Shown: positions 15,815 through 54,698 of the stretch, one piece after another
How the letters are laid out: each line of letters begins with the position of its first letter
Position numbering within the stretch: the stretch's first letter is position 1
IMG/VR virus record: IMGVR_UViG_3300042340_000379
Span: 62,001 to 126,000 of that record
DNA: 64,000 nucleotides
Direction: 5' to 3' (one strand)
The notes under the pieces: generated by a model
The model's database searches: none
Told to the model about the DNA's origin: nothing
What the model saw: only the letters and a program-made list of their open reading frames with translations
Program-made: the position numbers and the translations under genes

Positions 15815-16513
15815 ATGGAAACAGAGAATCAAGCATTAGAGCATGCTTCTCAGGCGCTCGGCGTTCTAGAGCAGCTAGCTATAACTCACAGGGATATGGA
15901 AGATACTGTCCGAAGTATCCCTGCAACCTATAGAGTAAGCTTTGACCCAATCCTCGAGCGCTTCAAACTTCTAATCGAAGTGCTTGAGGAAGATGACGAG
16001 CTGGTGCCAGAGCTGGTTAAAGGCCGAAGACTCGGAGATGTCGCCAGCTCTAAAATCGAAAGGTTAAAGATTGGCAAACAAATTATACGGCTTAGAGAAG
16101 TTGAAGGTCAGACCTACCAACAGATTGCTGAGCGCATGAATATAGAGGCTACCACTGTCTCTAAGTTCTGCAAATTCTATGACAGTCAGAAGCCAGCCGT
16201 GCGCTCTCGCTATCAGCGCACGAGTATCTTTGATACAAGCCAGAATTTTGAAAATCTGGGTGCTATGATTTATAGATGCCTAGGAAACCTCGAAAACCTA
16301 GACCCTGAGAATCACGTCAAGTACATCTCAGAGTTAAGGCAGACCATCGGGGCCGCGCAGAAGTGGATGGAGCAAGTTAGCTCCCACCACAAGTATGACA
16401 TTCTCAAACAGGCGATCATAGACATTCTCTACGACGAGCTGCCTGAAAAGCGAGAAGCTATCATCAAGAGGTTCCAATCCGTTGGGGCCGCTCAAGTTCT
16501 CACGGGAAGTTAA
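15815..16513 (+). CDS. HTH DNA-binding protein (terminase small subunit is one possibility)
   Basis: GQTYQQIAERMNIEATTVSKF HTH followed by a helical C-terminus. Confidence 0.5.
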   Translation: METENQALEHASQALGVLEQLAITHRDMEDTVRSIPATYRVSFDPILERFKLLIEVLEEDDELVPELVKGRRLGDVASSKIERLKIGKQIIRLREVEGQTYQQIAERMNIEATTVSKFCKFYDSQKPAVRSRYQRTSIFDTSQNFENLGAMIYRCLGNLENLDPENHVKYISELRQTIGAAQKWMEQVSSHHKYDILKQAIIDILYDELPEKREAIIKRFQSVGAAQVLTGS

Positions 16514-16523
16514 TTCTATATAA

Positions 16524-18932
16524 ATGCAAACAGATAACATGAGCCAAGCTATACAAGTTCCATATATTTCTCAAAAAGATATCCAGGAAGCATCTGTAGT
16601 CCATGAATTCCCAAAGTTTGGCCCTTTAGGCAGTGTTGTTGACTTGCGTACTTATCGACGTTGGTCAGATACAGACAACCGCCGCGAGAGTTTCTGGGAA
16701 CGGAATGCTCGCGTAGCTAACTATAATGCATCTCTTGCGTCAAAGCTCGATCGTCATGTAGAGCAAGATGCTAGAAAAGTATTTGATTTTATGAATCAAT
16801 TTCTAGCCTTTCCAAGTGGAAGAACAATGTGGGTTGGTGGAACAAAAGTCTCAGATGCCCACCCAGCTGCAAATTTCAATTGCAGTGCCCTCGCAATTAA
16901 CCGACTAGGTGCGTTTACAACCCTGTTTGAACTTCTTATGTTAGGAACAGGAGTCGGTTATAGAGTATTCTCTTCTGACATTAGCCAACTACCCAGCATA
17001 AAAGGGTACCCTAATTTGGTTCTTGAGGATTACGCTCCACTTAAAAAATCGAGCCGACAGCAAGAAACAACACAGCACCAAAACTCAGAAGAAGAAACAA
17101 TTTATGTGACTGTAGGGGACTCAAGGCGAGGCTGGATTCAGTCTGTTGAAATTCTACTCAATGTCTGGTTTGGAATTGATGAGAGTACAGAAAGGCCCAT
17201 TAAAAGAATCTCATTTAACCTAAATTCAATCAGACCCATGGGCGAGAGAATCCAAGGTTTTGGAGGAACTGCTTCCGGCCCAGAAGCTCTTGGAACTATT
17301 CTTACAAATATCCAAGATATTCTAAAAGAGTGCCCAACAAATAGACTCCGCAGTATTGACTGCATGGACATCTGTGACTGCATTGCTAAAGGCGTAGTTG
17401 CCGGTTCCTCACGGCGGTCAGCTCTGATCTGCCTATTTGAAGAAGGAGATGATTTGTGCGCCCACGCAAAACGGGGCCTATATAGCAATCCTGAAATGCA
17501 GAAGAAGCTGTATAGAAATCAATCTAATAACACAGAATGTGTTGGTAGTTCAAGGCTTCCAGCTTTTAGAGAGTTTCTAGAAAACAATCCTGACGCAGAC
17601 TGGTTCGATATAAAAAGTTTTATTGGGAAGCATCGCCCATCTATTGAATGGCTCAAAGATAGATTTGAAGTTGTAAAAGCAGAAGGAGAGCCTGGCTTTA
17701 ACAGCATTCTTATGATGGCAGCTAAGCGTTGGAAAGCAGTTAGAGAACACAGACCTGATTGCCCCGTAGAAGAAATCTGGGTTCGCTACTGTAATGTAGT
17801 CACAAACCCATGTCATGAGATTGTTTTATCAGCAGGGTACAGTGAAAAATTAGAGGACTGCGGAAAAGGAGTCTCCTTCTGTAACCTAACAACAATCCCT
17901 CTTCAAAATTACGTTGTAGATAAAAAGCTTCAAAAAGATCTTCTTAAAGAAGCAATCGAACTATGTGTTCGTATAGGGTTACGGCAAACCTGTGTCACCA
18001 TGCCAACTCAAGAACTCAACGAAACTCAAGCAGAAGAAAGGCTACTTGGAGTTAGCGCAACTGGCTGGAGAATGATGTTTGACCTCCTTGGCTGGACAAC
18101 AACATCAGGGGAAGTCAAAGATCTTCAAGCAGATATGAGAGCTTGGGCAAATAATGAAGCTACTCGGTATGCTTTAGAGTTGGGTGTTCCCAGGCCTCTG
18201 CTTGTCACATGTATTAAACCTGAAGGAACGTCTTCAAAAGTATTTGGCTCTACTGATGGTCTCCACTGGGATTGGGCAGAATACTATATTCGGCGCATTC
18301 AAATGTCTACAACTGATGCGTTAGCAAAAACTCTTAAAGCCCAGGGTTTCCCATGGAATCCTAAAGACTACGACATCAATTACCTAATTAAGCCTGAGAG
18401 TAAGCTAAACACTTGGCAAAAGATCGAAGTATTCAATGCGCTTTCTAACAAAGAAAAAGATGACATTTTTGAGCAATCAATGGCAGTTACATTTGATTTT
18501 CCGATTAAGTCACCAGCAAAGATAGCAAGTAGTTCTGTTTCTGCTATTGAGCAGCTAGAGAACATGCTCTCATTCTCAACTTGGTACACTGACCACATGC
18601 CATCCTCAACTATAACGGTGAAGGCTAATGAGTGGGATGGTGTAGCTAACTGGATTCACAACAATTGGACAGAGTACACGACCACGTCCATGTTCTCATA
18701 CTATAACGAGGCTCATCCTCTTCTACCGTATGAAGACATTACCAAGGAAGAGTACTACCAAATGCTGACTCAATTCAAGGAGAAATACAAACACCAATTC
18801 TCTGATGGACGAGTAACCTTTATGGTAGACGAAACACTGTTAGCCCAGAAAGAATACGAGGATGTTCTTAAAGGGCTAGACATTGATGAGTTATTAGATG
18901 CTGGGTGCTCTGTTGGATGTCCCATTCGATAA
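16524..18932 (+). CDS. nrdJ: Class II adenosylcobalamin-dependent ribonucleotide reductase (RTPR-like)
   Basis: FNCS, TNPCHEI, FCNL, KPEGTSS and C-terminal redox pair CSVGCPIR; no beta-subunit gene adjacent. Confidence 0.9.
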   Translation: MQTDNMSQAIQVPYISQKDIQEASVVHEFPKFGPLGSVVDLRTYRRWSDTDNRRESFWERNARVANYNASLASKLDRHVEQDARKVFDFMNQFLAFPSGRTMWVGGTKVSDAHPAANFNCSALAINRLGAFTTLFELLMLGTGVGYRVFSSDISQLPSIKGYPNLVLEDYAPLKKSSRQQETTQHQNSEEETIYVTVGDSRRGWIQSVEILLNVWFGIDESTERPIKRISFNLNSIRPMGERIQGFGGTASGPEALGTILTNIQDILKECPTNRLRSIDCMDICDCIAKGVVAGSSRRSALICLFEEGDDLCAHAKRGLYSNPEMQKKLYRNQSNNTECVGSSRLPAFREFLENNPDADWFDIKSFIGKHRPSIEWLKDRFEVVKAEGEPGFNSILMMAAKRWKAVREHRPDCPVEEIWVRYCNVVTNPCHEIVLSAGYSEKLEDCGKGVSFCNLTTIPLQNYVVDKKLQKDLLKEAIELCVRIGLRQTCVTMPTQELNETQAEERLLGVSATGWRMMFDLLGWTTTSGEVKDLQADMRAWANNEATRYALELGVPRPLLVTCIKPEGTSSKVFGSTDGLHWDWAEYYIRRIQMSTTDALAKTLKAQGFPWNPKDYDINYLIKPESKLNTWQKIEVFNALSNKEKDDIFEQSMAVTFDFPIKSPAKIASSSVSAIEQLENMLSFSTWYTDHMPSSTITVKANEWDGVANWIHNNWTEYTTTSMFSYYNEAHPLLPYEDITKEEYYQMLTQFKEKYKHQFSDGRVTFMVDETLLAQKEYEDVLKGLDIDELLDAGCSVGCPIR

Positions 18933-19189
18933 AAGCTAGTTACACAAACTGGGAAGGAAGAACGTCTAAGCGAACTTTCCTTCCCATCCTTTTCTACTGG
19001 GGAGCTACAAAATGGCACCCCAGTTTTCAACTTCTCATAGTGGCCTACGACTATGAGAAAAAATCCGTCCGAACATTTGCCCTAAGAGACTTTCATGGAA
19101 TTAAGAGAATCAACCCCGCGTATCACATCAGGCTACTGCGAAGGATCTGGAAAGAAAAAGCCAGGTTACTCAGAAATTCTAAAGGGTGA
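18917..19189 (+). CDS. Stand-alone WYL-like domain protein
   Basis: YTNWEG..SKR...P...YWG.TKWHP..Q.L..AYD.EK..VRTFAL.D pattern. Confidence 0.6.
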   Translation: MSHSIKASYTNWEGRTSKRTFLPILFYWGATKWHPSFQLLIVAYDYEKKSVRTFALRDFHGIKRINPAYHIRLLRRIWKEKARLLRNSKG

Positions 19190-19796
19190 GCAGCTTCCTA
19201 AATCCGACCCAGCTTGCAAGCTTCAGTCTCTCGGCTGGAAAGTCGCAATCCTTTCTGCCCGCTGTGTGGCTGAGATGCCAATACCAGATGCAGAAGCTAG
19301 TCACTTTCTAACTTGGATTAACAGCAACTTCTTCTCGCTAGGAGCATACGCTTTTAATAAAGGGAATACAGACCATAGAGTATTTCCCACTAACTGCGTA
19401 CAGCAACTGGAAGCCGAAGTTCAAAGAATGAAAACCTTCATTACTCGTGAGACAGGCCGAGCAGCAACAGACTTCATTAGACTCAAATCTTCTTATGGTC
19501 TTCTTGTAGAAGAAACCCAGCTAACCGTTAGGGAAACAGAGGCAGAGTTTGTAAGCTGGATGTACGACATCCGAATCGTGTCAGATTTTTACAGTCATCT
19601 AGATAAAGATAGTGAAAGCGCGTTTGTTCGCTACAAACGAATGCGAACCCTTGGTGACTTTCTAAACAGGCTGTCTACCTACCTGTTCTGGATGAATCAG
19701 TATCACGCTCTTCTATTTCAAATAGCTGAAGGACTTCCATTTGAGTACGCTGAGTGGAAATCGAATATTGAAGTCGGCCTTTTATTTCCTGAATAA
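19095..19796 (+). CDS. PduO/MMAB-type cob(I)alamin adenosyltransferase-like protein
   Basis: G.SEIL.GEQLPKSDP, TVRETE and FLNRLSTYLF match PduO motifs (G..V.K.D.R; V.RRAER; YLNRLSD.LF); next to nrdJ. Confidence 0.7.
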   Translation: MELRESTPRITSGYCEGSGKKKPGYSEILKGEQLPKSDPACKLQSLGWKVAILSARCVAEMPIPDAEASHFLTWINSNFFSLGAYAFNKGNTDHRVFPTNCVQQLEAEVQRMKTFITRETGRAATDFIRLKSSYGLLVEETQLTVRETEAEFVSWMYDIRIVSDFYSHLDKDSESAFVRYKRMRTLGDFLNRLSTYLFWMNQYHALLFQIAEGLPFEYAEWKSNIEVGLLFPE

Positions 19797-20015: not shown

Positions 20016-20039
20016 CTTCTAGTTGCCCACTTAACCCCC

Positions 20040-20071
20040 AAACCTCCACACTAGAATTAGCGTGGGGGTTT
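20040..20071 (+). promoter_or_regulatory. Inverted repeat enclosing a -10-like TAGAAT
   Basis: AAACCTCCAC-ACTAGAATTAGC-GTGGGGGTTT, 6 nt before the GGDEF/EAL start codon. Confidence 0.4.
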
Positions 20072-20077
20072 AACTAT

Positions 20078-21697
20078 ATGCCAGACACATCTTGGGACGC
20101 TATCTTCAACGCGACTCATACCATTCTTATTTCAGAATCAGGGAGAATCACCAAAAGCTCTCAAGGATTCGCTAATCTTCTAGGCTACACTCAATCAGCC
20201 TTAGAAGAAATGAACTATCGCAACATTGTCCATCTTGCTGATCGCGATCAAGATGAAGCTTTGTTTAAGGATCTTTTTAACGGAAACCAAACTCATTTTA
20301 ATTCCGAAGAGCGCTACATCCATAAAGAGGGATATACCATTTGGGTTCATATCATTAGCACTCTCTATGTTGAAGATGGGGCTAGGTTTATTGTAACTGT
20401 CCATGACATCACTACTCAAAAAGAGAAAGAGCTGTGTGTAGAACATTTATCTACACACGATGGTTTAACAAATCTCTACAACCGAGCCTTTTTCACAGAA
20501 TCCCTAAAGCAGACAATTGTAAAATGCTCGCGCTATTCTTGTGAAGACTATCTGTTCTACCTAGATATCAACACGTTTAAGCAAATTAATGACGACTATG
20601 GCCAAGAGGTCGGTGACCTCTGCTTAAAAATTATTGCCTCTAGGTTAACAAGTATATTTAGAAATACAGATGAAATCTTTAGAGTGAGCGGCGATGAGTT
20701 TGCCATCATTGTTCATAACGTCCAGAGTGAAGAAGCGCTTACGTACCTAATCTCAAGAATACAAAAAGAGCTTGATAAACCCATTCTCTCTGTAGCCAAC
20801 AACTTAACTGTTTCAATAACTCTGTCTCTCAGTCTGGGTGTGTGCAAACTAACTCATATATCCTCTCCATCAGATGCTCTCGCCATTGTTCAAAGATCTC
20901 TTCAGAAATCTAAAGCTGCGGAAGGGCAAACTATAGAGTGGGCATCATCTAAAGAAATCTATGAAGAGATAGAACTTGAACGGGAGATCCGTCAAGCAAT
21001 CCTCAAAGAAGACTTTGTTGTTTATTATCAGCCAATCAGAAATCTAAGTGACATGTCTCTCGCGGGGCATGAAGCGCTGCTCAGATGGCCTAAGAAAAAC
21101 ATATCCCCGATTACTATCTTAGAGATAGCCGAAAAGCTCAATCTAGTAGAACAACTTGAATGGAACTTATTTAAAAAGATTTTGAAGGTTGCTTCTTCTG
21201 AAGGGCTAGCCAAAAGATGGATTTCTGTTAATCTAAATTCACTGCTGCACGCTAAAAACTTTCGGGCAGAACTTACCCAACTTCTAAAAGACTACGATGT
21301 AAATCGAGACAGTATTGCGTTCGAGGTTATTGAAACTATCCGGCATAGCGACCCGGTTGTGCGCCTTTTAATAGACATTCAAAATGACGGCCACTCTCTT
21401 AAGCTAGATGACTTTGCACGCGATTATGCCTCGTTTGTATGGTTAAAGACACTCCCTCTAGATAGCGTAAAAATTGACCGTGAGTTTATCCACGGTATTG
21501 CTAAGGATAAACACAAAAAGCTGCAAGCTATCACCAGCGCTATGATTGATGTCTGCCACTCTCTTGGAATAAAGGTTGTCGCGGAAGGAATTCAAAGAGC
21601 TGATGATCTTGAGTGGCTAAAGCTAGCGGGCTGCGATCAAGGGCAGGGATTTCACCCATCTTTAGGAATACCTAGTAAAGATTTGCAGAAAAGATAG
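20078..21697 (+). CDS. PAS-GGDEF-EAL c-di-GMP cyclase/phosphodiesterase
   Basis: PAS (HKEG..IWV...HDIT), D.LT.LYNR, FKQIND.YG..GD, RNTD I-site, SGDEF, YQPI, EALLRW, DDF, KID, AEG. Confidence 0.92.
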   Translation: MPDTSWDAIFNATHTILISESGRITKSSQGFANLLGYTQSALEEMNYRNIVHLADRDQDEALFKDLFNGNQTHFNSEERYIHKEGYTIWVHIISTLYVEDGARFIVTVHDITTQKEKELCVEHLSTHDGLTNLYNRAFFTESLKQTIVKCSRYSCEDYLFYLDINTFKQINDDYGQEVGDLCLKIIASRLTSIFRNTDEIFRVSGDEFAIIVHNVQSEEALTYLISRIQKELDKPILSVANNLTVSITLSLSLGVCKLTHISSPSDALAIVQRSLQKSKAAEGQTIEWASSKEIYEEIELEREIRQAILKEDFVVYYQPIRNLSDMSLAGHEALLRWPKKNISPITILEIAEKLNLVEQLEWNLFKKILKVASSEGLAKRWISVNLNSLLHAKNFRAELTQLLKDYDVNRDSIAFEVIETIRHSDPVVRLLIDIQNDGHSLKLDDFARDYASFVWLKTLPLDSVKIDREFIHGIAKDKHKKLQAITSAMIDVCHSLGIKVVAEGIQRADDLEWLKLAGCDQGQGFHPSLGIPSKDLQKR

Positions 21698-21734: not shown

Positions 21735-22115
21735 ATGGTTGCTCTTAGAAATGCTCCTCCTTTCCGCCAGTCGTCTACACCACGTCCTGCCTACAAAACA
21801 TACTCCCCAACGGCTCGCCTCCAACCTCGGCAGATGGCCCCAAGGAAACAGCAAAACTTGCTGATTTATTCCCTTGTCTGGGGATTTGCTTTTTACCTAG
21901 TGACATCCACCGCATATAGCCTAGCTCTTGGCAAACTCGAGCCTATCTACTTTATGGGATTGATAGCCGTGGCGCTAATTATGGTAATCAACGCATTTGG
22001 GGAGCAGCTTGGCTTGTCGTTATGGTTTAGAATATTAGCTAGCTTCGCGATGGGCTGGCTGATTCCGACCTTTATGAGCGGGCTTTACTTTTTTCAAAAC
22101 CACATCGCGATGTAA
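21735..22115 (+). CDS. Three-TM membrane protein
   Basis: Basic N-terminus and three hydrophobic helices. Confidence 0.6.
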   Translation: MVALRNAPPFRQSSTPRPAYKTYSPTARLQPRQMAPRKQQNLLIYSLVWGFAFYLVTSTAYSLALGKLEPIYFMGLIAVALIMVINAFGEQLGLSLWFRILASFAMGWLIPTFMSGLYFFQNHIAM

Positions 22116-22143
22116 TCCTGTTAACTTTGTATAGTACAAAAAC

Positions 22144-23037
22144 ATGACCCGACCCTTAGATCAAATCGTGGCCGCTGTTCAGGCCGAGCAGTCGATCACC
22201 TGGCACGAATTCTGTCTCGCCGCTAACCGCACCGCCAGCAAAGAGAAATTCCCTTCTGGGTATCCCGCTGACCTTGCTGTCAGCGTTATGGGGCAGTTTA
22301 CCTATATTGGCCAAGAGCTAGATAAACTCAAAAAGGCATTGTTCTATGGAAAGAGTATGCCAGAACTTGTCGCAGCGCATCGCGTAACTATTGGAGAATC
22401 AGACCAGTACTCAGGCGAAGACTGGCCTGATAATATCTCACCTGACATTATTCACTGGATTTTGGGTGAGGCCACTGAGTCTGTTGAGCTAGTTGAAGCA
22501 CTAATCAAAGGGATGGTTGATGGTGAATCCCTTGATGCCATCAATCTTATGGAAGAAGAGGGTGACGGGCACTGGTACCGCGCTCTTCCTTACATTCACG
22601 CATTGGAAACAAAAGGCTTTGACCCAGAAGAACGCAAACAGCTAGTCTGGCGCAAAGTTCTCCTCAAGCTCATCACTCGCTACGGCGATAAGTTTAGCGC
22701 TACCGCTGCAATCGAACGGAATACTAACCTAGAGCGCGAAGTTCTAGAGGCGGGCATTGTTATGCCTAACGGAGAAATCAATTCCGCGATCGAGCAGCAA
22801 ATCATTCTCACCTCAGAACCTGATTTGGAAACTGCCCGCCAGGCACTCTCCGCTCTAGCTCGAGCAGAGCAGCAACTGCAAGACGCTCACACTGAGATCC
22901 TGACAGAAGCCGAGCAATACCTAAACATACTTTTGCTTCAGCATGTACTTCCCAGCACGATCGCTGAAATGGAAATGCCAGTTTTAATAAAGCAGCAAGT
23001 ACTAAAAATGGTACAAGCAGCCTCGACTACAAACTAA
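22144..23037 (+). CDS. MazG-like all-alpha NTP pyrophosphohydrolase with C-terminal extension
   Basis: KKALFYGK, GEATESVELVE, EEEGDGHWY, KL..RYGDKFS. Confidence 0.7.
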   Translation: MTRPLDQIVAAVQAEQSITWHEFCLAANRTASKEKFPSGYPADLAVSVMGQFTYIGQELDKLKKALFYGKSMPELVAAHRVTIGESDQYSGEDWPDNISPDIIHWILGEATESVELVEALIKGMVDGESLDAINLMEEEGDGHWYRALPYIHALETKGFDPEERKQLVWRKVLLKLITRYGDKFSATAAIERNTNLEREVLEAGIVMPNGEINSAIEQQIILTSEPDLETARQALSALARAEQQLQDAHTEILTEAEQYLNILLLQHVLPSTIAEMEMPVLIKQQVLKMVQAASTTN

Positions 23038-23102
23038 TTCGGGTAATAAGCTAAAATGGGCCTAGCTAGTAAACTAGGCCTTTGCCGTATCTGGAGATAA
23101 AA

Positions 23103-23309
23103 ATGTCAGATCAATCACAACCCGTACAACTCTCTTTGGAACAACAGTTTAGTCTGCGATCGTTTGAAGCTCAAGTTAACCGCATGAATCTTGAGCAGGC
23201 CCAGCAGTTTCTAGTCATGCTCTACGAGCAGATGATGTACAGAGAAAATACGTATAAGTCCTTAATCAAATCAGATCTACTAGGCATAAGCCGACCAATG
23301 TACCCATGA
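23103..23309 (+). CDS. nblA: Phycobilisome degradation protein NblA
   Basis: LSLEQQFSLRSFEAQVNRMNLEQAQQFLVMLYEQMMYREN.YK.L; GGAG RBS before ATG 23103. Confidence 0.95.
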   Translation: MSDQSQPVQLSLEQQFSLRSFEAQVNRMNLEQAQQFLVMLYEQMMYRENTYKSLIKSDLLGISRPMYP

Positions 23310-24126: not shown

Positions 24127-24794
24127 TTAGCTTCAGCCGGTTTAATGGCGTAACCAACTTCTTTGGCGTCGAGCCCACCCTCAGTGGTGGGATTTCAATG
24201 ACTATCCACGCCGCTGAAGTTAACCATGACCTAAACCGTGATTGGTATTTTGGAAGATCGCGGCTTGTTGAAATTGAGATGAGCGCTCATCAATTTGCTG
24301 AACTCATCACAAATATGAATCGCGGGCCGGGTATTCCCTGCACAATCAAGCACATCGCGGGGCATGACATAGAAAAGTATGTCCCAATGCCTACCGTTAG
24401 AGAAAAGTTTGACGAAAATTTAACGGATAGTCTTTCTGAGCTTGAACGTAGGGCCGCAGCTCTTCATCAAGAAATTGCCGACCTCAAAAATGATAAAGGT
24501 AAAGCCGGTAAAAAAGATCTGGAAGTTCTTACTGGAAAAGCAGAGATGTTACTCAGGCAAATTAAGAGCAACCTGCCCTTCCTGACGCAATCGTTCTCAG
24601 AACAGCTGGACAACCAAGTGCTTAAAGCAAAGGTTGAGTTTACAGCCTATGTTGATAGTCAAGTCTACGCTCATGGGCTTGACGCCCTGGGAATTCAAGC
24701 AACCCTACCCGCCGCTGAAGAAAGTCCCGAGCAGGTTGACACTCCCCGACCTGAAGGTGCGGGGATTCTTGGTTCACTGACCGGACTTAACTAA
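24081..24794 (+). CDS. Hypothetical phage protein; C-terminus replaced by IS sequence
   Basis: Removing the element at 24736-26058 restores ...ESPEQDKLEG-stop. Confidence 0.75.
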   Translation: MSDKETRYEHSSYGLISFSRFNGVTNFFGVEPTLSGGISMTIHAAEVNHDLNRDWYFGRSRLVEIEMSAHQFAELITNMNRGPGIPCTIKHIAGHDIEKYVPMPTVREKFDENLTDSLSELERRAAALHQEIADLKNDKGKAGKKDLEVLTGKAEMLLRQIKSNLPFLTQSFSEQLDNQVLKAKVEFTAYVDSQVYAHGLDALGIQATLPAAEESPEQVDTPRPEGAGILGSLTGLN

Positions 24795-24890
24795 GCAGGA
24801 TTTCTCCAACTTAGTCAGAGGCTCAATCTCCCCAAGCGTTATAGTTTGGATCTGCCCGACCCTACTTAATCCAAGTTTCAGGATGTTAAT
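24716..24890 (-). ncRNA. Predicted omegaRNA of element 1 (5' end approximate)
   Basis: Established TnpB architecture: scaffold overlaps the tnpB 3' end and right end; guide is the flank CCTGCTCGGGACTTTC.... Confidence 0.5.
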
Positions 24891-26058
24891 GGCTGCATTT
24901 ACGTCTCTATCTTCCATGTAGCCACAGTTAGGGCAAACGTGGGTTCTGACAGAGAGTGCTTTCTTAACTCTTGTTCCACAGTTAGAGCAATCTTGACTGG
25001 TATAGTGTGCGGGAACGGCGACAGCAATCTTTCCGTACTTACCAGCAAAATATTCTAACCATTTACGAAACGTTGACCATCCTGAATCACTAATCGACTT
25101 AGCTAGGTGGCGATTCTTAACCAACCCTTTCACATTCAAGTCTTCATAGGCGATCAAATCGTTAGATTGAACTAAACGCAGTGCCTTATTTTTAAGCCAC
25201 TCAACACGCTGCCTACTTACTCTTAAATGATTTAGGACGTACCGCTTTCTAGCTTTCTGATAGTTCTTGGATTGAGGTTTAGATCCTTTACGGAATTTCT
25301 TAGACTTTCTACGGTTGGCTCTATTCAACTGCTCCTCAGATTTGCGGTAAAACTTGGGGGATTCTACAAACTCGCCATTGCTAGTGGCGAAGAAGTATTT
25401 AATCCCTAAGTCAATCCCGACCGTGTTGTGGGTAGGCTCCGACTCTACTGTGCTGTCTGCCTGAATGCAGAATTGAACGTAGTAACCGTCAGCCCGCTTA
25501 ACCAAACGAACACGCTTGATCTGACTTTCATTATAGAAAGATAGATCATAGGTGCCAATTAAGCGTAACTCCCCAATATCAAAACCATCGGTAAACTTAA
25601 TCCGTTTTGGCTCAAGTAACTTCCATCCAGAGGTTTTGTATTCTACTGAACGTCCATTCTTTTTGAACTTAGGGAATCCTTTCTTACCCTTGGTTTTCTT
25701 TTTGCAGTTGTCATAGAACCGACTGATTGAACTCCAAGCCCTCTCAGCCGAAGCTTGCCGAGCCATAGAGTTGAGTTTTTTAGCAAACGGAAATTCCTCA
25801 GCTAACTCCTTGCAGAGTTTGTTGAGATCATATTTTCCTACTTTCTCATTATCCATCCAGTAACGAAGCGCTTTATTCCTCACGAATTGACTCGTGCGAA
25901 TGGCTTCGTCAATAGCTGACGATTGAGAAGGTTTTGTCCGTGCTTTGAACTCTAGTACAATCATATTCTTATGCTAACAGCTTCAGCATAAAATGACAAC
26001 AAAATAGCTAATTAACTAAGCCGTCCTAGAAGGACGGGGTTTTAGACCCAGTTTTTTG
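24736..26058 (-). mobile_element. Non-autonomous IS200/IS605-family element 1 (tnpB only)
   Basis: Left end TTAT|CAAAAAACTGGGTCTAAAA plus hairpin; right end GAAT-hairpin-TCAA; the empty site restores the interrupted gene. Confidence 0.88.
24774..25964 (-). CDS. tnpB: RNA-guided endonuclease TnpB
   Basis: RuvC GIDLG, YEDL, DRDVNAA and Zn finger CSNC...CPNC all intact. Confidence 0.95.
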   Translation of the reverse strand: MIVLEFKARTKPSQSSAIDEAIRTSQFVRNKALRYWMDNEKVGKYDLNKLCKELAEEFPFAKKLNSMARQASAERAWSSISRFYDNCKKKTKGKKGFPKFKKNGRSVEYKTSGWKLLEPKRIKFTDGFDIGELRLIGTYDLSFYNESQIKRVRLVKRADGYYVQFCIQADSTVESEPTHNTVGIDLGIKYFFATSNGEFVESPKFYRKSEEQLNRANRRKSKKFRKGSKPQSKNYQKARKRYVLNHLRVSRQRVEWLKNKALRLVQSNDLIAYEDLNVKGLVKNRHLAKSISDSGWSTFRKWLEYFAGKYGKIAVAVPAHYTSQDCSNCGTRVKKALSVRTHVCPNCGYMEDRDVNAAINILKLGLSRVGQIQTITLGEIEPLTKLEKSCLVKSGQ

Positions 26059-26747: not shown

Positions 26748-28009
26748 CTAAAGAGACGTGGATTCTTGAGCAATCCAAATTTGGATTCTCAAAGGCGCAA
26801 TCAAAGCACCCCTACTGACTCCATCGAGGTTGACCCTCAACTTTGCCGCTACTTTTCTCAGGATATTCGCCGCGCCATTGCAGTCAGCGTTGATCTTGAT
26901 GCCATCTTTAGATCGATACAGACCACGCTTAACCCGCTTACCAGACTCTTGCCACCCTTCGGGTTTTGCACCGAATGTAGGTAGTTCATCTTGGTCGATA
27001 AAGCTGGCTTTACTAGCGTAGCTTTCCTCAGTCTCGACAAAAACGATCCCGTACTGCTCACATAATTGAGCGATCCGATCCTTTAGTCGGCCTGTTGGGA
27101 TCTGGACAAACTTTTGATTTGTCTTGCTACCCAGGTTGATTCCTTGGCGCTGCCCCTGGTTCCAACCAAAAACAACAGAGCCGATCCTTTTCTCAATGCA
27201 ATGGTTGATCACAATCCGGGCTGTTTTATTTACAGCATCCCTAACTTGACGGTTTCTCTTCTCAGTAATCCCGGCTAGCTGCTTAGACCAAAAACCCTGT
27301 GGTTGATTTTCCTTAAGGATCGAAACCCTTTTGTTATACCACTGGTTCAAAGACTTTAAGTGCAGGCCATCCACAAAAAAGGACGTGCCCACATTGCTGA
27401 CACAAGTGATCCAGTTATTCAGACCTGGGTCAATCCCCAGCACGTTAGCGGGGTCTACGTCAGTCTTTACTGGCTCTACCTTATAGATCAATTCAAGGTA
27501 GAAAACACCATTCCTAGGCAAAATCCGATATTCCCGGATCGACTTAAAATCAAGGTTTGTGGGCATTGGCATATAGAAGGCGTCTAAGCCAAACCACGCT
27601 TTAACCTGACGACCCAGGGGGAACCGTAGACCTTCAGGCTTTAACTCAACGTCAGCCCCTGGGTAGGTGACTAAGTTTAACCCAGGCTTCCGGTAGTTTG
27701 GCAGCTTAGGCTTCTGAGAGACTGTCCCTTTTTCACGCCTTTTAGCAAACCGAAGAAGGACTTAAAAGACTCTGCTACTGTGGTCAAACATTGCTGGGAA
27801 ACGTGAGACTGCATCGCCTTAAAATGGGGGTTCCCTTTTAACTCACGGTGTAAATCAAACTTGGACGGAGCTTTACCTATCTTGAAGTAAAGTTGACGAG
27901 ACAAATAGGTACCACAGTTATGTAGCTTATTTGACTCCCCACAAAGAAACTCAAGGACTCCTTTTAGCTGGGGGTCTGGGTTGATTAAAACTTGCTGGCA
28001 TCCAAACAT
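26748..28009 (-). pseudogene. tnpB: TnpB split by a one-base frameshift near 27725-27733
   Basis: The frame changes at AAA AAG GGA; the -1 frame continues TVSQKPKLPNYRK...GIDPG...EESYAS...INADCNGAANI. Confidence 0.85.
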
Positions 28010-29632: not shown

Positions 29633-30976
29633 ATGGCAAGTAGTATTGAGGCCGACTTAAATCGGGCTAACGAACAGCTTAAATCAGAGAGGGTTTCCGT
29701 TAAGATTAAACGTCGCGGGAACGCTCTCTTTTTAGTTGGTACCCTCCCACCTAAACCTTCCTCTAAAAAACAAAAGCCTCACCAACAAGAAATCTCTCTC
29801 AAGAAACTTCAAGCAGAACACGCCAATATTCTTTACGCGCAAGAACAGGCCCGCCGAGTTGATAGAGACCTGAAGAACAGTAAGTTTGATTGGAGCGAAT
29901 ACTCTTCTAAAATCTATGCAGAAACCCACAAAACAATTGGGGTACTTCTAGAAGAGTTTAAAAAAGACTATTGGCAAATGCACCCAAAAGGTAAGACTAG
30001 CGAGATTAACTGGCATAGATCCTACTGGGCTTTCTTTAAAAAATTAGACTTAAAAGCAGAACTTAGCCTCAAAGAACTTATTAAAGTTATTGAGAAATAC
30101 GAGCCTGATACTCAGAGCCGGTCAAAGTGCTGCCAAAAATTTGTAAAGTTTGCTGAGTGGTGCGATCTACCTACGTCTGACATTAGAAAAATCCGCTCTC
30201 TAAAAGGAAAGTACGGAATCTCCAAAACTAGAAAAAGAAAAATCCTAACTGATCAACAAATTGTAGATCTTAGAGTTCAAATTCCTCCCGGCCCCCTGAG
30301 ATGGATGTTTGAAGTCTTAGTCGTGTGGGGACTTAGACCCCACGAGGTCTATGAGATTGATATGGAGAAACTTGCGGTAGAACGAGACGGCATTATAACA
30401 GTTTTTAGCCAAAAGACTAAACGGGAGCGCATTGTATCAGCCATTTACCCTGAATGGTTTAAGAGGTGGGAGTTGTGGAAAGGAATGCCACCTCCCACCA
30501 ACAGAGAAAGAGAAAAAGGCAAAACAGTTACTTACTACTTTAAGAAACTCAACCTCGAAATTTATCCTTATGATCTAAGGCATGCTTGGGCTGTTAGAGC
30601 TCTCTACTACCCAAAAATTGATGAGGCTCAAGCCGCCGCTCAGATGGGGCATTCTCTAAAAATCCACCAACAAGTTTACGAATACTGGATTACAGAGCAA
30701 CGAGCTCGAGCAGAACAACTTAAGAGAATGTACGGAGATGAAAAGATTGAGGTTCCTGACGACCCTCCAGAAGGAGATTACCGGCAAATTCGCCTTAAAG
30801 ACGACCCCCTTAACGCGGAACGCCACCCACAAAACTACTCTTTAATCCCATGCCCAAAGTGCGGGTCAAACTCAGTCATCTGGAATGGCTGGGCGATCAA
30901 CCAAGATAAACTTTATGGGCGCAGACAGAAATGCCAAGTATGTAATTTCATCAAGACGATCAAGCCCACAGCTTAG
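29633..30976 (+). CDS. Tyrosine integrase (cyanobacterial type) with C-terminal Zn ribbon
   Basis: GLRPHE, KT, YDLRHAWAVR, MGHS...H...Y; C-terminal CPKC...CQVC. Confidence 0.9.
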   Translation: MASSIEADLNRANEQLKSERVSVKIKRRGNALFLVGTLPPKPSSKKQKPHQQEISLKKLQAEHANILYAQEQARRVDRDLKNSKFDWSEYSSKIYAETHKTIGVLLEEFKKDYWQMHPKGKTSEINWHRSYWAFFKKLDLKAELSLKELIKVIEKYEPDTQSRSKCCQKFVKFAEWCDLPTSDIRKIRSLKGKYGISKTRKRKILTDQQIVDLRVQIPPGPLRWMFEVLVVWGLRPHEVYEIDMEKLAVERDGIITVFSQKTKRERIVSAIYPEWFKRWELWKGMPPPTNREREKGKTVTYYFKKLNLEIYPYDLRHAWAVRALYYPKIDEAQAAAQMGHSLKIHQQVYEYWITEQRARAEQLKRMYGDEKIEVPDDPPEGDYRQIRLKDDPLNAERHPQNYSLIPCPKCGSNSVIWNGWAINQDKLYGRRQKCQVCNFIKTIKPTA

Positions 30977-32692: not shown

Positions 32693-32696
32693 TCAA

Positions 32697-32769
32697 GCCG
32701 TGTTAGCTCAGTTGGTAGAGCAGTTGGCCTGTACCCAACGTGTCGCGGGTTCGAGCCCTGCATACGGCT
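32697..32769 (+). tRNA. tRNA-Thr(UGU), no encoded CCA
   Basis: Full cloverleaf: GCCGTGT/ATACGGC, GCTC/GAGC, GTTGG-CCTGTAC-CCAAC, GCGGG-TTCGAGC-CCTGC. Confidence 0.9.
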
Positions 32770-32839
32770 TTAACAATCAATAAGAAAATATGAATATCAC
32801 AATACGGCACTGCCTGCGATCTGTAGAAGAAAGAATCAT

Positions 32840-34119
32840 CGAAGAAATGGGTCTGAAACCCCGCCGTTTTAGGGCGGCTTGCATTTTACGTGCTAGAATG
32901 TGAGCATGACACAGAAAGCGTTTAAGTACCGATTCTATCCAACACCTGAGCAGGAATCTTTGCTCAGGCGAACGATGGGCGGCACCCGTCTTGTCTATAA
33001 CCGAGCACTGGCCGCAAGGACTGAAGCTTGGTATGAACGACAGGAACGGGTGGGGTACGTTGAAACGTCGGCTATGCTCACCGAATGGAAAAAAGATGAA
33101 AGTCTTTTGTTCCTGAATGAAGTGAGTTGTGTGCCTCTGCAACAAGGGTTGCGGCATCTGCAAACCGCCTTCACAAATTTCTTTGCGGGTCGGGCGAAAT
33201 ATCCCAACTTCAAGAAGAAGAGGAATGGTGGTAGTGCTGAGTTCACCAAGTCAGCGTTTAGGTTCAAGGACGGTCAGGTATTCCTGGCCAAGTGCTCTGA
33301 ACCATTGCCGATTCGCTGGAGTCGTGCCCTGCCTGAGGGTGCTGAACCCTCCACAATAACGATCAAGCTGACTCCCTCTGGGAAGTGGTTTGTCTCGTTG
33401 TTGGTGGATGTTGAGATTGAACCTTTGCCTACGGTTATGGCCAAGATCGGCCTTGACCTGGGCATCAATAGTTTGTTGGCGCTGAGCACTGGGGAGAAGG
33501 TCGCCAACCCGAAGATCTTTCGGGCTAAGCACAAAGCTCTCAAGAAAGCTCAGAAAGCGCTGGCACGTAAGCAGAAAGGGTCTAACAATCGCTACAAGGC
33601 ACGGCTCAAAGTAGCCCGTGCTCACGAAGCGATTGTCAACGCCCGCAAAGATTTCCTTCACAAGCTGACAACTCGATTGGTGCGCGAAAACCAAACCATC
33701 GCCGTCGAAGACTTGGCTGTGAAGAATATGGTGAAGAACCGTAGCCTCGCCCTCTCCATCAGTGATGCGAGTTGGGGTGAGTTGGTTCGGCAGCTTGAGT
33801 ACAAGTGCGATTGGTACGGCAGGGAATTGGTCAAGATTGACCGTTGGTTCCCATCCTCGAAGCGGTGCAGCCAATGCGGCCACACCGTCGAAAAACTGCC
33901 TCTCAACATTCGCTCTTGGGATTGCCCTAGTTGTGGTGCTCACCATGATCGGGATGTCAATGCTGCAAAAAATGTCTTGGCCGCTGGGCTAGCGGTGTCA
34001 GTCTGTGGAGCGACCGTAAGACCCGAACAGAGTAAGTCTGTGAAGGCTGGTGCTACGAAGCAGAAAAACTCCTGAGCGATCAGGGGAATCCCCTTCCTTT
34101 AGGTGGGGGAGCATGTCAA
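32840..34119 (+). mobile_element. Non-autonomous IS200/IS605-family element 3 (tnpB only)
   Basis: Left end TCAT|CGAAGAAATGGGTCTGAAA plus hairpin; right end GAAT-hairpin-TCAA; higher GC than flanks. Confidence 0.88.
32906..34075 (+). CDS. tnpB: RNA-guided endonuclease TnpB
   Basis: KYRFYPT HTH, GLDLG, VEDL, CSQC...CPSC, DRDVNAA. Confidence 0.95.
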   Translation: MTQKAFKYRFYPTPEQESLLRRTMGGTRLVYNRALAARTEAWYERQERVGYVETSAMLTEWKKDESLLFLNEVSCVPLQQGLRHLQTAFTNFFAGRAKYPNFKKKRNGGSAEFTKSAFRFKDGQVFLAKCSEPLPIRWSRALPEGAEPSTITIKLTPSGKWFVSLLVDVEIEPLPTVMAKIGLDLGINSLLALSTGEKVANPKIFRAKHKALKKAQKALARKQKGSNNRYKARLKVARAHEAIVNARKDFLHKLTTRLVRENQTIAVEDLAVKNMVKNRSLALSISDASWGELVRQLEYKCDWYGRELVKIDRWFPSSKRCSQCGHTVEKLPLNIRSWDCPSCGAHHDRDVNAAKNVLAAGLAVSVCGATVRPEQSKSVKAGATKQKNS

Positions 34120-54393: not shown

Positions 54394-54698
54394 AACGTTC
54401 CGCCATTAATAAACGAGCTTCTATAATACTCCGTTCCGTTAGCATTCGATGTCACAAAGCTTGCGTAGGTTGCGTTAGTACTTAAAGGCACCTCCAAAAA
54501 ATCCTCAGCGGCAGTAATTTCTAAATAAGTATCTTCAGCATCTTGGGTTGTTAAAAAATCCTCAATACCTGAGTTTGGTGCATAGTTATCTTTAATAAAA
54601 GACAAGACGGCCCTCACCCGTGCAGGCGTAATAAAGTTCTCAACGTTGTCAGGAAGATTGGTTGTAATTAACGCTTGAAGGTCTTCTGGTTCAGCCAT
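54390..54698 (-). CDS. Hypothetical structural protein
   Basis: NLPDN...ITPA.VR; overlaps the terL stop. Confidence 0.55.
   Translation of the reverse strand: MAEPEDLQALITTNLPDNVENFITPARVRAVLSFIKDNYAPNSGIEDFLTTQDAEDTYLEITAAEDFLEVPLSTNATYASFVTSNANGTEYYRSSFINGGTF

What the first reader, a model, noticed from the sequence alone, without database searches (positions are those of the whole stretch)
20078..21697. Phage-encoded PAS-GGDEF-EAL c-di-GMP enzyme
Seen: a complete sensor-cyclase-phosphodiesterase with phage-like base composition among phage genes. It has an SGDEF A-site, a correctly spaced RxxD I-site and most EAL catalytic residues, but DIN replaces DID and loop 6 reads DDFARDY instead of DDFGTGY. 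Known: c-di-GMP governs motility, pili, aggregation and EPS in cyanobacteria. Inference: the phage or lysogen rewires host second-messenger signalling, for example receptor masking, superinfection exclusion or dispersal. To my knowledge this is uncommon in phages.
Basis: partly seen in the sequence, partly recalled or inferred. Interest (0 to 1): 0.75.

Follow-up and report, generated by a model that had tools for sequence, protein, structure and literature searches.

The report
Cyanophage PAS-GGDEF-EAL c-di-GMP signalling gene
A large virus of freshwater cyanobacteria carries, and has long kept, its own intact gene for an enzyme that makes or breaks the bacterial signal c-di-GMP, most likely to reset the host's stick-or-swim and growth signalling during infection.

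Summary
ORF 20078..21697 (+) encodes an intact 539-aa PAS-GGDEF-EAL protein, with Pfam E-values from 5e-11 to 2e-48. It lies about 82 kb inside a 207,855-bp IMG/VR viral contig, between a class II RNR and NblA.

It is not a chimera. Three relatives (78%, 60% and 45% identity) occur in independent assemblies in the same gene order. Codon usage matches the phage. All three domains are under purifying selection.

No cellular protein exceeds about 36% identity. The four phage proteins form one long-branched clade with no identifiable donor.

All ten EAL catalytic residues are invariant in the clade. The cyclase signature varies (SGDEF, GGDEF, DSDHF, GGDEF), but the RxxD I-site is invariant. Loop 6 and 13 other near-invariant EAL positions are replaced across the whole lineage.

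Best reading: an infection-time c-di-GMP phosphodiesterase with a regulatory, possibly still catalytic, GGDEF domain. The direction of its effect is unproven.

Tandem GGDEF-EAL genes are rare in phages but not unique. Several other large IMG/VR contigs carry canonical copies. I rate this a new member of a known kind, of moderate interest.

The parts
20078..21697 (+). Intact 539-aa PAS-GGDEF-EAL gene (end includes the stop codon)
   Evidence: AF2 model with mean pLDDT 89.5. Top fold match is RbdA PAS-GGDEF-EAL.
20123..20413 (+). PAS domain (residues 16-112); ligand or cofactor unknown
   Evidence: Pfam PAS_9 4.6e-11 and PAS_3 7e-11. No PDB sequence match for residues 1-125. This is the least conserved domain: 83/43/40% identity to the three relatives.
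20453..20923 (+). GGDEF domain (residues 126-282). D163-I-N165 at 20564-20572, I-site RNTD at 20660-20671, A-site SGDEF at 20687-20701
   Evidence: D163, N171, D180, R195, D198, D206 and F208 are invariant in the clade. The signature varies: SGDEF / GGDEF / DSDHF / GGDEF.
20981..21655 (+). EAL domain (residues 302-526) with the complete catalytic set
   Evidence: E332, R336, N385, E416, E419, D444, D445, K465, E503 and Q523 are invariant in all four lineage members. It superposes on active PDEs at 2.2-2.9 A with TM 0.81-0.87.
21407..21436 (+). Derived loop 6, DDFARDYASF in place of DDFGTGYSSL
   Evidence: D449 and A451 are fixed in 4 of 4 phage proteins. In 116 cellular homologues the same positions are G (111), C (3) or S (2), never D, and S in 116 of 116. 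Six other viral GGDEF-EAL proteins are canonical or near-canonical here.
20033..20072 (+). Conserved GC-rich stem-loop ending about 6 nt before the ATG. Its G-run lies 6-9 nt from the start codon, so it may sequester a Shine-Dalgarno (inferred)
   Evidence: MFE -19.4 kcal/mol, z -2.5. Present upstream of the orthologues in L005 and L003, with 3 compensatory pairs. The motif is unique in the window, 2 overlapping matches against 0.12 expected.
16524..19796 (+). Upstream syntenic neighbours: class II (B12-dependent) ribonucleotide reductase and a cobalamin-adenosyltransferase-like gene
   Evidence: Pfam. Same order in L003/L004, where the adenosyltransferase-like protein is 60% identical.
21735..23309 (+). 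Downstream syntenic neighbours: a 126-aa ORF that looks hydrophobic by eye, a 297-aa ORF, and NblA (23082-23309)
   Evidence: NblA Pfam 1.2e-22. Orthologues sit downstream of the gene in L003 and L005.

Best explanation
This is a genuine cyanophage gene that has been inherited vertically for a long time. It encodes a compact, soluble PAS-GGDEF-EAL protein of the RbdA / MorA / PA0575 type. It sits in the co-directional block of replication, nucleotide-metabolism and host-takeover genes that runs from a sigma-like gene through the RNR to NblA. It is therefore most likely made during infection (inferred). Its conserved core activity is most likely EAL-catalysed hydrolysis of host c-di-GMP (inferred from sequence). 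The GGDEF domain would act mainly as a nucleotide-sensing regulator, binding GTP at the A-site and c-di-GMP at the invariant RxxD I-site. In this particular phage (SGDEF) it may still make some c-di-GMP. The PAS domain gates output in response to an unknown cue. The remodelled beta5-alpha5 loop (loop 6: the FGTG hinge is replaced by FARD) probably changes how catalysis is coupled to dimerisation, for example by uncoupling the enzyme from host-type control (speculative). Lowering c-di-GMP would push a cyanobacterial host towards the motile, buoyant, non-aggregated state. In filamentous hosts it would also perturb CdgR-controlled cell size and viability. A conserved hairpin over the likely ribosome-binding site suggests that translation is also controlled (inferred).
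For: Identity and fold. Phage ownership: the gene is about 82 kb into a 207,855-bp viral contig with phage genes on both sides. More than 11 genes are colinear with L003/L004 at 26-70% protein identity, and L005 is also colinear. Codon usage equals the phage mean. Selection: pS is saturated (above 0.8), while pN is 0.16 for EAL, 0.29 for GGDEF and 0.37 for PAS between the window and L005. PDE as the core function: all ten EAL catalytic, metal and substrate residues are invariant across 45-78% identity, and EAL is the best conserved domain. P0003 lost the cyclase signature (DSDHF) but kept the EAL set and the I-site, and the tree shows this as a derived loss. Precedents: RbdA is a PDE reported to be stimulated by GTP binding to its GGDEF domain (PMC10294637). 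CC3396 has a non-catalytic regulatory GGDEF (discussed in PMC8079147). Host biology: low c-di-GMP permits motility and buoyancy and high c-di-GMP gives aggregation and biofilm (PMC10124867); c-di-GMP controls cell size and viability in Anabaena (PMC13075795).
Against: Loop 6 departs from DDFG(T/A)GYSS at positions that are invariant or nearly so in 116 cellular homologues. Loop 6 is reported to be needed for dimerisation and for Mg2+ and c-di-GMP binding (Rao 2009, as cited in PMC7290235), and positioning of the DDFGTG motif is how dimerisation activates EAL PDEs (PMC5301497). PDE activity could therefore be weak, conditional or absent. Three of the four lineage members keep a catalytically plausible [GS]GDEF with every metal- and guanine-binding residue, and SGDEF enzymes can be active (PMC3974145, PMC8079147). 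Net synthesis is therefore not excluded. There are no expression data, no biochemistry and no identified host. Domain orientation in the model is uncertain (pTM 0.66).
Confidence: 0.5

Rival explanations
1. It is a bifunctional enzyme or a net diguanylate cyclase. The SGDEF site synthesises c-di-GMP under I-site feedback, and the EAL with its altered loop 6 is weak or switched off. Infection would then raise c-di-GMP, giving aggregation, reduced type IV pilus motility and altered surface structures, for example superinfection exclusion or keeping hosts clustered for progeny.
For: The metal ligands (D163, D206), E207, the guanine-binding N171 and D180, and the correctly spaced RxxD are all present. 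SGDEF occurs in 12 of 116 cellular homologues and is active in ECA3270, MbaA (in vivo) and CdgB (PMC3974145, PMC8079147, PMC9683572). The non-canonical loop 6 could cripple the PDE (PMC7290235, PMC5301497). Phage-borne stand-alone GGDEF proteins exist: phage G gp350, SP-15 and L002.
Against: One lineage member (P0003) has DSDHF, so cyclase chemistry is dispensable, whereas the EAL catalytic set is never lost and EAL is the most constrained domain. Putting a serine at the first position of the signature abolished activity in VCA0965 (PMC3974145), so SGDEF activity depends on context.
Confidence: 0.25
2. It is a catalytically inert c-di-GMP receptor, sponge or scaffold. The protein binds c-di-GMP at the I-site and/or the EAL pocket without turning it over. 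It would titrate the messenger or dock onto host partners, as LapD and FimX do.
For: Loop 6 is degenerate and 14 near-invariant EAL positions are changed. The I-site is invariant even where the A-site is dead. LapD and FimX appear among the fold and sequence matches.
Against: Known receptor-type EAL domains have lost metal-binding or catalytic residues (my knowledge of LapD and FimX, not checked here). In this lineage all ten are invariant under strong purifying selection, which is hard to explain without metal-dependent chemistry.
Confidence: 0.15
3. It is an EAL hydrolase with altered specificity. The remodelled pocket would cleave a different cyclic di- or oligonucleotide, for instance an immune signal of a host defence system, making this an anti-defence enzyme.
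For: The lineage-specific substitutions sit next to catalytic residues: S387 by N385, T418 between E416 and E419, and G449/S451/L453 in loop 6. Other viral GGDEF-EAL proteins do not share these changes. A PDB entry (6ifq) labels an EAL protein as a 'cyclic dinucleotide phosphodiesterase'.
Against: There is no direct evidence. The I-site and the guanine-specific GGDEF residues point to c-di-GMP and GTP. No defence or anti-defence context was seen next to the gene.
Confidence: 0.07
4. It is an artefact: host DNA mis-joined to a phage contig, or the host flank of a prophage.
For: GGDEF-EAL genes are typically cellular. Many IMG/VR hits lie at contig ends.
Against: The gene lies about 82 kb inside the contig with phage genes on both sides. 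The same neighbourhood was recovered in at least three other independent assemblies at 45-78% identity. Composition is phage-typical. No cellular protein exceeds about 36% identity among 1.84 billion representatives.
Confidence: 0.02

Closest known systems
RbdA (PA0861), Pseudomonas aeruginosa; PAS-GGDEF-EAL crystal structures 5xgb/5xgd/5xge
   Same: Same PAS, GGDEF, EAL order. It is the best full-length fold match (Foldseek E 1e-36). It has an RxxD I-site, as stated for RbdA in PMC9683572. [quoted passage not shown]
   Different: Only about 21% identity. RbdA has an additional N-terminal putative periplasmic sensor region (PMC10294637), whereas the phage protein starts directly with the PAS domain. 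The phage loop 6 is non-canonical; I did not check RbdA's own motifs here. RbdA is chromosomal, not viral.
PA0575 (5m3c) and MorA (4rnh), Pseudomonas GGDEF-EAL tandems
   Same: They are the best sequence matches in the PDB (2.6e-46 and 4.3e-44). Aligned motifs agree, including GGDEF-domain GTP-site residues and the EAL catalytic set.
   Different: 26-29% identity. They are large multi-sensor membrane proteins (my knowledge; the crystallised fragments are the GGDEF-EAL part). They have the canonical DDFGTGYSS (alignments).
MbaA (Vibrio cholerae) and CdgB (Azospirillum): SGDEF-type GGDEF-EAL proteins
   Same: They have a non-canonical SGDEF A-site in a tandem GGDEF-EAL. Both are reported to be bifunctional or signal-switched (PMC8079147, PMC9683572).
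   Different: [quoted passage not shown] MbaA has EVL rather than EAL, and CdgB lacks the RxxD I-site.
CC3396/PdeA (Caulobacter): EAL PDE with a non-catalytic regulatory GGDEF
   Same: It is the model for a GGDEF domain acting as a nucleotide sensor for the EAL domain. The P0003 member (DSDHF) fits this pattern. The PdeA EAL superposes at 2.2-2.7 A.
   Different: The window's own GGDEF keeps catalytic residues. GTP activation has not been tested here.
Phage-borne GGDEF or GGDEF-EAL genes: Bacillus phage G gp350, Bacillus phage SP-15 DGC, Bordetella phage CN1 GGDEF; IMG/VR contigs L178, L206, L192, L170
   Same: They are viral carriage of c-di-GMP domains. L192 and L170 even have the PAS-GGDEF-EAL order, and L178 sits beside a tail-fibre/baseplate gene.
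   Different: The isolates carry single domains only. The IMG/VR tandems are 24-31% identical, which points to independent acquisitions, and they have canonical or near-canonical GGDEF, E-x-T-E and loop 6 motifs. None of them is a cyanophage with NblA.
Phage peptides that bind the host cyclase YfiN (Pseudomonas phages; PMC8085984)
   Same: Phage interference with host c-di-GMP signalling.
   Different: They are small inhibitory peptides acting on a host enzyme, not a phage-encoded turnover enzyme.

Membership tests
GGDEF-domain diguanylate cyclase (PF00990) | Domain profile match above the curated cut-off | tested here: met
   115.9 bits against a cut-off of 23.8, residues 126-282
GGDEF-domain diguanylate cyclase (PF00990) | GG[D/E]EF A-site signature | tested here: inconclusive
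   The window has SGDEF. The relatives have GGDEF, DSDHF and GGDEF. SGDEF is active in some proteins and not in others (PMC3974145, PMC8079147).
GGDEF-domain diguanylate cyclase (PF00990) | Metal-binding Asp/Glu and guanine-binding Asn/Asp (PleD D327, E370, E371, N335, D344 equivalents; numbering from my knowledge) | tested here: met
   D163, D206, E207, N171 and D180 are present. All except E207 are invariant in the clade, and E207 is His in P0003.
GGDEF-domain diguanylate cyclase (PF00990) | RxxD inhibitory site five residues upstream of the signature | tested here: met
   R195-N-T-D198, then five residues, then SGDEF. R and D are invariant in 4 of 4.
GGDEF-domain diguanylate cyclase (PF00990) | GTP to c-di-GMP synthesis | not testable with these tools
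   Needs an enzyme assay.
EAL-domain c-di-GMP phosphodiesterase (PF00563) | Domain profile match and fold | tested here: met
   165 bits against a cut-off of 31.3. The model superposes on the MucR, MorA, PdeA, TBD1265, RocR and BifA EAL domains at 2.2-2.9 A, TM 0.81-0.87.
EAL-domain c-di-GMP phosphodiesterase (PF00563) | Catalytic, metal and substrate residues (RocR E175, R179, N233, E265, E268, D295, D296, K316, E352, Q372 equivalents) | tested here: met
   E332, R336, N385, E416, E419, D444, D445, K465, E503 and Q523 are all present and invariant in 4 of 4. The residue roles are those listed in PMC7290235.
EAL-domain c-di-GMP phosphodiesterase (PF00563) | Canonical loop 6, DFG(T/A)GYSS (the mark of an active 'class I' EAL) | tested here: not met
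   DDFARDYAS. G447A, G449D and S451A fall at positions that are G in 116/116, G in 111/116 and S in 116/116 cellular homologues.
EAL-domain c-di-GMP phosphodiesterase (PF00563) | c-di-GMP to pGpG hydrolysis | not testable with these tools
   Needs an enzyme assay.
RbdA-type PAS-GGDEF-EAL dispersal phosphodiesterase | PAS, GGDEF, EAL order in one polypeptide | tested here: met
RbdA-type PAS-GGDEF-EAL dispersal phosphodiesterase | N-terminal sensor module upstream of the PAS domain | tested here: not met
   The PAS domain begins at residue 16 and the whole protein is only 539 aa. [quoted passage not shown]
RbdA-type PAS-GGDEF-EAL dispersal phosphodiesterase | GTP-stimulated PDE activity | not testable with these tools
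   Biochemistry required.
Phage auxiliary (host-manipulating) gene | Embedded in a phage genome and conserved in related phages | tested here: met
   About 82 kb into a 207,855-bp viral contig. Phage genes lie on both sides. The block is syntenic in L003/L004 and L005. Codon usage is typical of the phage.
Phage auxiliary (host-manipulating) gene | Expressed during infection with an effect on the host | not testable with these tools
   No transcriptome and no cultured phage-host pair.

The most novel reading that the evidence does not exclude
The EAL domain of this cyanophage lineage keeps every catalytic residue. But it has replaced the glycine hinge of loop 6 and 13 other near-invariant positions, several of them adjacent to catalytic residues. 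It may therefore be a functionally new EAL. One possibility is a phosphodiesterase that is independent of dimerisation and constitutively active, having escaped host-type control. Another is an enzyme retargeted to a different cyclic nucleotide, for example a host immune signal, with the GGDEF I-site and the PAS domain as its regulators.
Probability: 0.1. Interest if true: 0.8.

Novelty: new member of a known kind. Interest (0 to 1): 0.55.

Why it matters
c-di-GMP governs motility, aggregation, buoyancy and, in some filamentous species, cell size and survival in freshwater and benthic cyanobacteria. A phage lineage that has kept its own sensor-coupled c-di-GMP enzyme under purifying selection, next to NblA and nucleotide-metabolism genes, suggests that second-messenger takeover is part of the infection programme. 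Signalling enzymes would then belong on the list of cyanophage auxiliary genes. If so, infection could change bloom behaviours such as sinking, mat formation and dispersal before lysis.

The lineage also offers a natural experiment on EAL loop 6. The catalytic residues are held fixed while the regulatory hinge is rewritten, and the consequences can be tested directly by biochemistry.

Tried and rejected
- **DNA search:** Megablast of 12 kb around the gene against 50,697 phage records found nothing, so there is no close cultured relative.
- **PAS ligand:** The PAS domain alone has no sequence match in the PDB, so there is no ligand clue.
- **Promoters and terminators:** The consensus scan was uninformative. 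Promoter-like sites were below the shuffle expectation.
- **RNA families:** Rfam found no c-di-GMP riboswitch, only a tRNA-Thr.
- **Host or donor naming:** Cluster look-ups returned no organism names. The genome-contig scan was limited by its patterns and returned mainly Gammaproteobacteria at 32% identity or less, with no cyanobacterial donor. The metagenome scan added no lineage members.
- **dN/dS:** Synonymous sites are saturated, so I cite only pN and pS. The '<' ratios printed in that call are an arbitrary bound and are not used.
- **Phylogeny:** The treekit mixture-model run did not finish, so I used FastTree. The phage stem is long, so its attachment point is unreliable and no donor is claimed.
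- **Literature:** Rao et al. 2009 on loop 6 is not held. I cite it only through PMC7290235 and support it with PMC5301497.
- **3D clustering:** Model coordinates are not exposed, so I could not test whether the 14 changed EAL positions cluster in space.
- **Rejected readings:** An assembly chimera or prophage host flank is rejected on synteny, composition and position. Recent transfer from the host is rejected because no homologue exceeds about 36% identity and codon usage is ameliorated. A pseudogene is rejected because the ORF is intact and under purifying selection.
Full report

Yes. The window has an uninterrupted ATG-initiated ORF at 20078..21697 (+) of 539 aa.

Pfam places three domains, all far above the curated thresholds:
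- PAS_9/PAS_3 at residues 16-112 (about 5e-11).
- GGDEF at residues 126-282 (2e-33).
- EAL at residues 302-526 (2.4e-48).

I translated each motif at its nucleotide coordinates:
- D-I-N at 20564-20572.
- RNTD at 20660-20671.
- SGDEF at 20687-20701, with exactly five residues between RxxD and the signature.
- EALLR at 21071-21085.
- NLNS at 21230-21241.
- EVIET at 21323-21337.
- DDFARDYASF at 21407-21436.
- KID at 21470-21478.
- AEGI at 21581-21592.
- QGQG at 21638-21649.

One point needs correcting. 'DIN for DID' belongs to the GGDEF domain, on the strand that carries the metal-binding Asp, not to the EAL domain. The metal ligand D163 is intact. An Asn at the second position occurs in 13 of 116 cellular homologues.

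**2. Is it really a phage gene?**

The protein is 100% identical to one on IMGVR_UViG_3300042340_000379, a 207,855-bp contig. From the locus coordinates, the window corresponds to contig positions 62,001-126,000, and the gene starts at about 82,078.

The surrounding genes are those of a large myovirus-type cyanophage:
- A helicase, ThyA, a primase and an exonuclease (PHROGs).
- A class II RNR and a cobalamin-adenosyltransferase-like gene.
- NblA at 23082-23309 (1.2e-22) and an M15 peptidase.
- Baseplate J, and a terminase large subunit interrupted by a LAGLIDADG intein.

The terminase is about 31% identical to those of Ma-LMM01-type Microcystis phages and a Microcoleus phage.

The gene's GC3 (0.383) and its codon-usage score (0.057) sit at the window mean (0.405 and 0.057). 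The three TnpB genes, used as a foreign-DNA control, score -0.088 to 0.006.

**3. Relatives and synteny**

A k-mer/HMMER search of 5.8 billion proteins found only three close relatives. They are P0002 (78%), P0003 (60%) and P0004 (45%), all 538-542 aa with the same architecture.

An exhaustive HMMER pass over 1.84 billion representatives confirmed the gap. The phage cluster scores 967 bits and the next protein scores 312 bits. Everything else is at or below about 36% identity and is mostly 700-2,100 aa long.

The relatives come from independent assemblies:
- In L003/L004 the order is PD-(D/E)XK exonuclease, two ORFs, sigma-70-region-4-like gene, class II RNR, adenosyltransferase-like gene, PAS-GGDEF-EAL, 126-aa ORF, dUTPase, NblA.
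- In L005 the gene is followed by the 302-aa ORF and NblA.

BLASTP shows that more than 11 of these genes are colinear with the window at 26-70% identity, with the c-di-GMP gene at 45% in the middle of that range.

This excludes an assembly chimera. It indicates long vertical inheritance in the phage lineage.

A FastTree of the GGDEF-EAL region (120 rows) puts the four phage proteins in one clade (support 100). The clade sits on a stem of about 1 substitution per site, outside all 116 cellular sequences, including the four named cyanobacterial ones. No donor can be named.

**4. What selection says**

Synonymous sites are saturated (pS above 0.8). Non-synonymous divergence between the window and L005 is 0.16 in EAL, 0.29 in GGDEF and 0.37 in PAS, and it is likewise well below pS in the other pairs.

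Identity of each domain to the three relatives:

| Domain | P0002 | P0003 | P0004 |
|---|---|---|---|
| EAL | 84% | 74% | 52% |
| GGDEF | 68% | 54% | 44% |
| PAS | 83% | 43% | 40% |

All ten canonical EAL residues are invariant. They are E332, R336, N385, E416, E419, D444, D445, K465, E503 and Q523.

In the GGDEF domain the metal ligand D163, the guanine ligands N171 and D180, and the I-site R195 and D198 are invariant. The signature itself reads SGDEF (window), GGDEF, DSDHF and GGDEF.

The tree topology is (P0004,(P0003,(window,P0002))). This makes DSDHF a derived loss on one branch. Cyclase chemistry is therefore dispensable in this lineage. The EAL site and the c-di-GMP-binding I-site are not.

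**5. A lineage-specific EAL remodelling**

In 116 cellular homologues loop 6 is DDFG[T/N..]GYSS:
- Position 447 is G in 116 of 116.
- Position 449 is G in 111, C in 3 and S in 2, and never D.
- Position 451 is S in 116 of 116.

The phage clade has DDFARDYAS, DDFARDHAS (twice) and DDFGQDHAG.

A systematic scan found 17 positions where at least 90% of cellular homologues share a residue that none of the four phage proteins has. Fourteen are in the EAL domain:
- S387 to N/E, two residues after the catalytic N385.
- T418 to I/M, between E416 and E419.
- G449D, S451A and L453F in loop 6.
- Also G341, F347, I348, C369, W375, L413, I489, Q510 and P530.

Six tandem GGDEF-EAL proteins from other large viral contigs have canonical or near-canonical motifs at these sites. 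The remodelling is therefore specific to this cyanophage lineage.

The literature ties loop 6 (the beta5-alpha5 loop) to dimerisation and to Mg2+ and c-di-GMP binding (PMC7290235, citing Rao 2009). [quoted passage not shown]

Here the two Asp ligands are retained, but two of the hinge positions that are Gly in cellular homologues are not. I infer an altered coupling between oligomeric state and catalysis. I cannot tell whether this locks the enzyme on, off, or onto another substrate.

**6. Structure**

An AF2 model built from a 42-sequence alignment is confident (mean pLDDT 89.5, pTM 0.66).

Foldseek against the PDB gives these matches:
- The RbdA/PA0861 PAS-GGDEF-EAL structures are the best full-length matches (E 1e-36).
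- DosP, PA0575 and MorA follow.
- The EAL domain superposes on active PDE domains at 2.2-2.9 A with TM 0.81-0.87.

By sequence the best solved relatives are PA0575 (5m3c), MorA (4rnh) and RbdA (5xgb).

The PAS domain alone matches nothing in the PDB by sequence. I see no LOV-type Cys motif by eye, so its cue is unknown.

**7. How it most likely works**

*Shown:*
- It is an intact, selected, phage-owned PAS-GGDEF-EAL protein.
- It has a complete EAL catalytic set, an intact I-site and a plausible but non-canonical A-site.

*Inferred:*
- It is produced during infection, together with the replication, nucleotide-metabolism and NblA block. All of these genes are co-directional, with no convincing internal promoter or terminator.
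- It resets host c-di-GMP.

I commit to net hydrolysis (confidence about 0.5), with the GGDEF domain as a GTP and c-di-GMP sensing regulator, as reported for RbdA (PMC10294637) and CC3396 (PMC8079147). My reasons are that the EAL is the invariant and most constrained part, and that one lineage member has abandoned cyclase chemistry.

SGDEF can be active (ECA3270, MbaA, CdgB; PMC3974145, PMC8079147, PMC9683572). A bifunctional or net-cyclase role is therefore the main rival (0.25). An inert receptor or sponge follows (0.15), then an altered-substrate hydrolase (0.07).

In cyanobacteria, low c-di-GMP favours motility and buoyancy, and high c-di-GMP favours aggregation and biofilm (PMC10124867). 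In Anabaena, c-di-GMP sets cell size and is essential for viability through CdgR (PMC13075795). Marine Prochlorococcus and Synechococcus lack these enzymes (PMC10124867), which fits a freshwater or benthic host.

One TnpB (32900-34075, GC 0.52) is 87-95% identical to TnpBs from a 6.1-Mb genome and from unnamed short metagenome contigs. It is about 81% identical to many Microcoleus and Pseudanabaena copies. This hints at a filamentous host but does not prove it.

**8. A conserved leader hairpin**

Immediately upstream of the ATG, at 20033-20072, is a GC-rich stem-loop (MFE -19.4 kcal/mol, z -2.5).

The same element precedes the orthologues in L005 and L003, with three compensatory pairs. It is unique within the window, with 2 overlapping matches against 0.12 expected.

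Its 3' G-run lies 6-9 nt from the start codon in all three phages, and the tail is poor in U. I therefore favour a translation-control hairpin that sequesters the ribosome-binding site over a terminator. With only three sequences this remains a suggestion.

**9. How unusual is it?**

Among 50,697 phage records, no complete isolate genome has the tandem. The high-coverage hits are mislabelled bacterial WGS contigs or short faecal contigs.

Genuine isolates carry single domains:
- Bacillus phage G gp350 (GGDEF).
- Citrobacter phage Chris1 (EAL).
- Pseudomonas phage Y10.

In BFVD the model finds viral GGDEF and PAS proteins but no viral EAL.

A broader pattern scan of IMG/VR returned at least 295 contigs with relatives. 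Many lie at contig ends or on roughly 18-kb elements predicted in isolate genomes.

Tandem genes also sit on large contigs:
- L178 (328 kb), beside a BppL_N / Peptidase_S74 tail-fibre protein.
- L206 (259 kb).
- L192 (170 kb), a PAS-GGDEF-EAL followed by an HD_5 protein.
- L170 (93 kb), near a phage OB-fold ligase domain.

Viral DGC genes have been noted in viromes (PMC7785012). I found no paper describing a phage tandem GGDEF-EAL or any cyanophage c-di-GMP enzyme.

**Verdict.** The gene is rare, recurrent in large phages, and apparently undescribed. It is a new member of a known kind, distinguished by conservation across a cyanophage lineage and by a remodelled EAL. Interest is moderate (0.55).

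Noticed in passing
window 40287-53492 (-): A giant 4,401-aa ORF whose only Pfam hit is an N-terminal staphylococcal-nuclease (SNase) domain at residues 39-140. It lies between the structural and packaging genes.
   Followed up: partly
window 54691-57954 (-): The terminase large subunit (about 31% identical to Ma-LMM01-type Microcystis phages over residues 592-1033) is interrupted by an intein with a LAGLIDADG homing endonuclease. In relative L003 the class II RNR carries an intein instead, and the window's RNR does not.
   Followed up: partly
window 24774-25964 (-), 26748-27572 (-), 32900-34075 (+); tRNA-Thr 32696-32770: There are three IS200/IS605-type TnpB genes within 10 kb. The third has GC 0.52 and atypical codon usage and lies just downstream of a tRNA-Thr. 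It is 87-95% identical to TnpBs from a 6.1-Mb genome and unnamed short metagenome contigs, and about 81% to Microcoleus and Pseudanabaena copies. This is a possible clue to the host.
   Followed up: partly
window 16524-19796 (+): A B12-dependent class II RNR is followed by a cobalamin-adenosyltransferase-like gene. The pairing is conserved in L003 (60% identity). It suggests that the phage supplies the AdoCbl cofactor for its own RNR.
   Followed up: no
window 15815-16513 (+): A 232-aa protein with a sigma-70 region 4 motif is the best conserved gene of the syntenic block (71% identical in L003). It may be a phage transcription factor heading the unit that contains the c-di-GMP gene.
   Followed up: no
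window 20033-20072 (+): A conserved GC-rich hairpin lies directly upstream of the start codon and is shared with L005 and L003 with compensatory changes. In the window two alternative C-rich 5' arms (20033-20040 and about 20041-20049) could pair with the same G-rich 3' arm.
   Followed up: partly
L002 9377-10411 (+), and 6310-7308 (-): An unrelated 208-kb IMG/VR jumbo-phage contig encodes a 344-aa GGDEF-only protein with a canonical GGDEF and a correctly spaced RxxD. A neighbouring 332-aa ORF looks tubulin/PhuZ-like by eye, which I did not test.
   Followed up: no
L192 5701-8569 (+): A 170-kb viral contig (GC 0.31) has a PAS-GGDEF-EAL gene immediately followed by an HD_5/HD-domain protein. This could be a second cyclic-nucleotide phosphodiesterase, and so a two-gene signalling module in a phage.
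   Followed up: no
IMG/VR loci L143, L146, L149, L150, L152, L153, L157, L159, L162, L195: A recurrent set of roughly 18-kb 'viral' elements predicted in isolate genomes each carries a central PAS-GGDEF-EAL-type gene. These may be a mobile element or satellite, or a systematic misprediction.
   Followed up: no
window 29633-30976 (+): A 447-aa ORF has only a sub-threshold match to the phage integrase family (23.9 bits against a cut-off of 27.1) and no PHROG hit. Whether the phage can lysogenise is unresolved.
   Followed up: no
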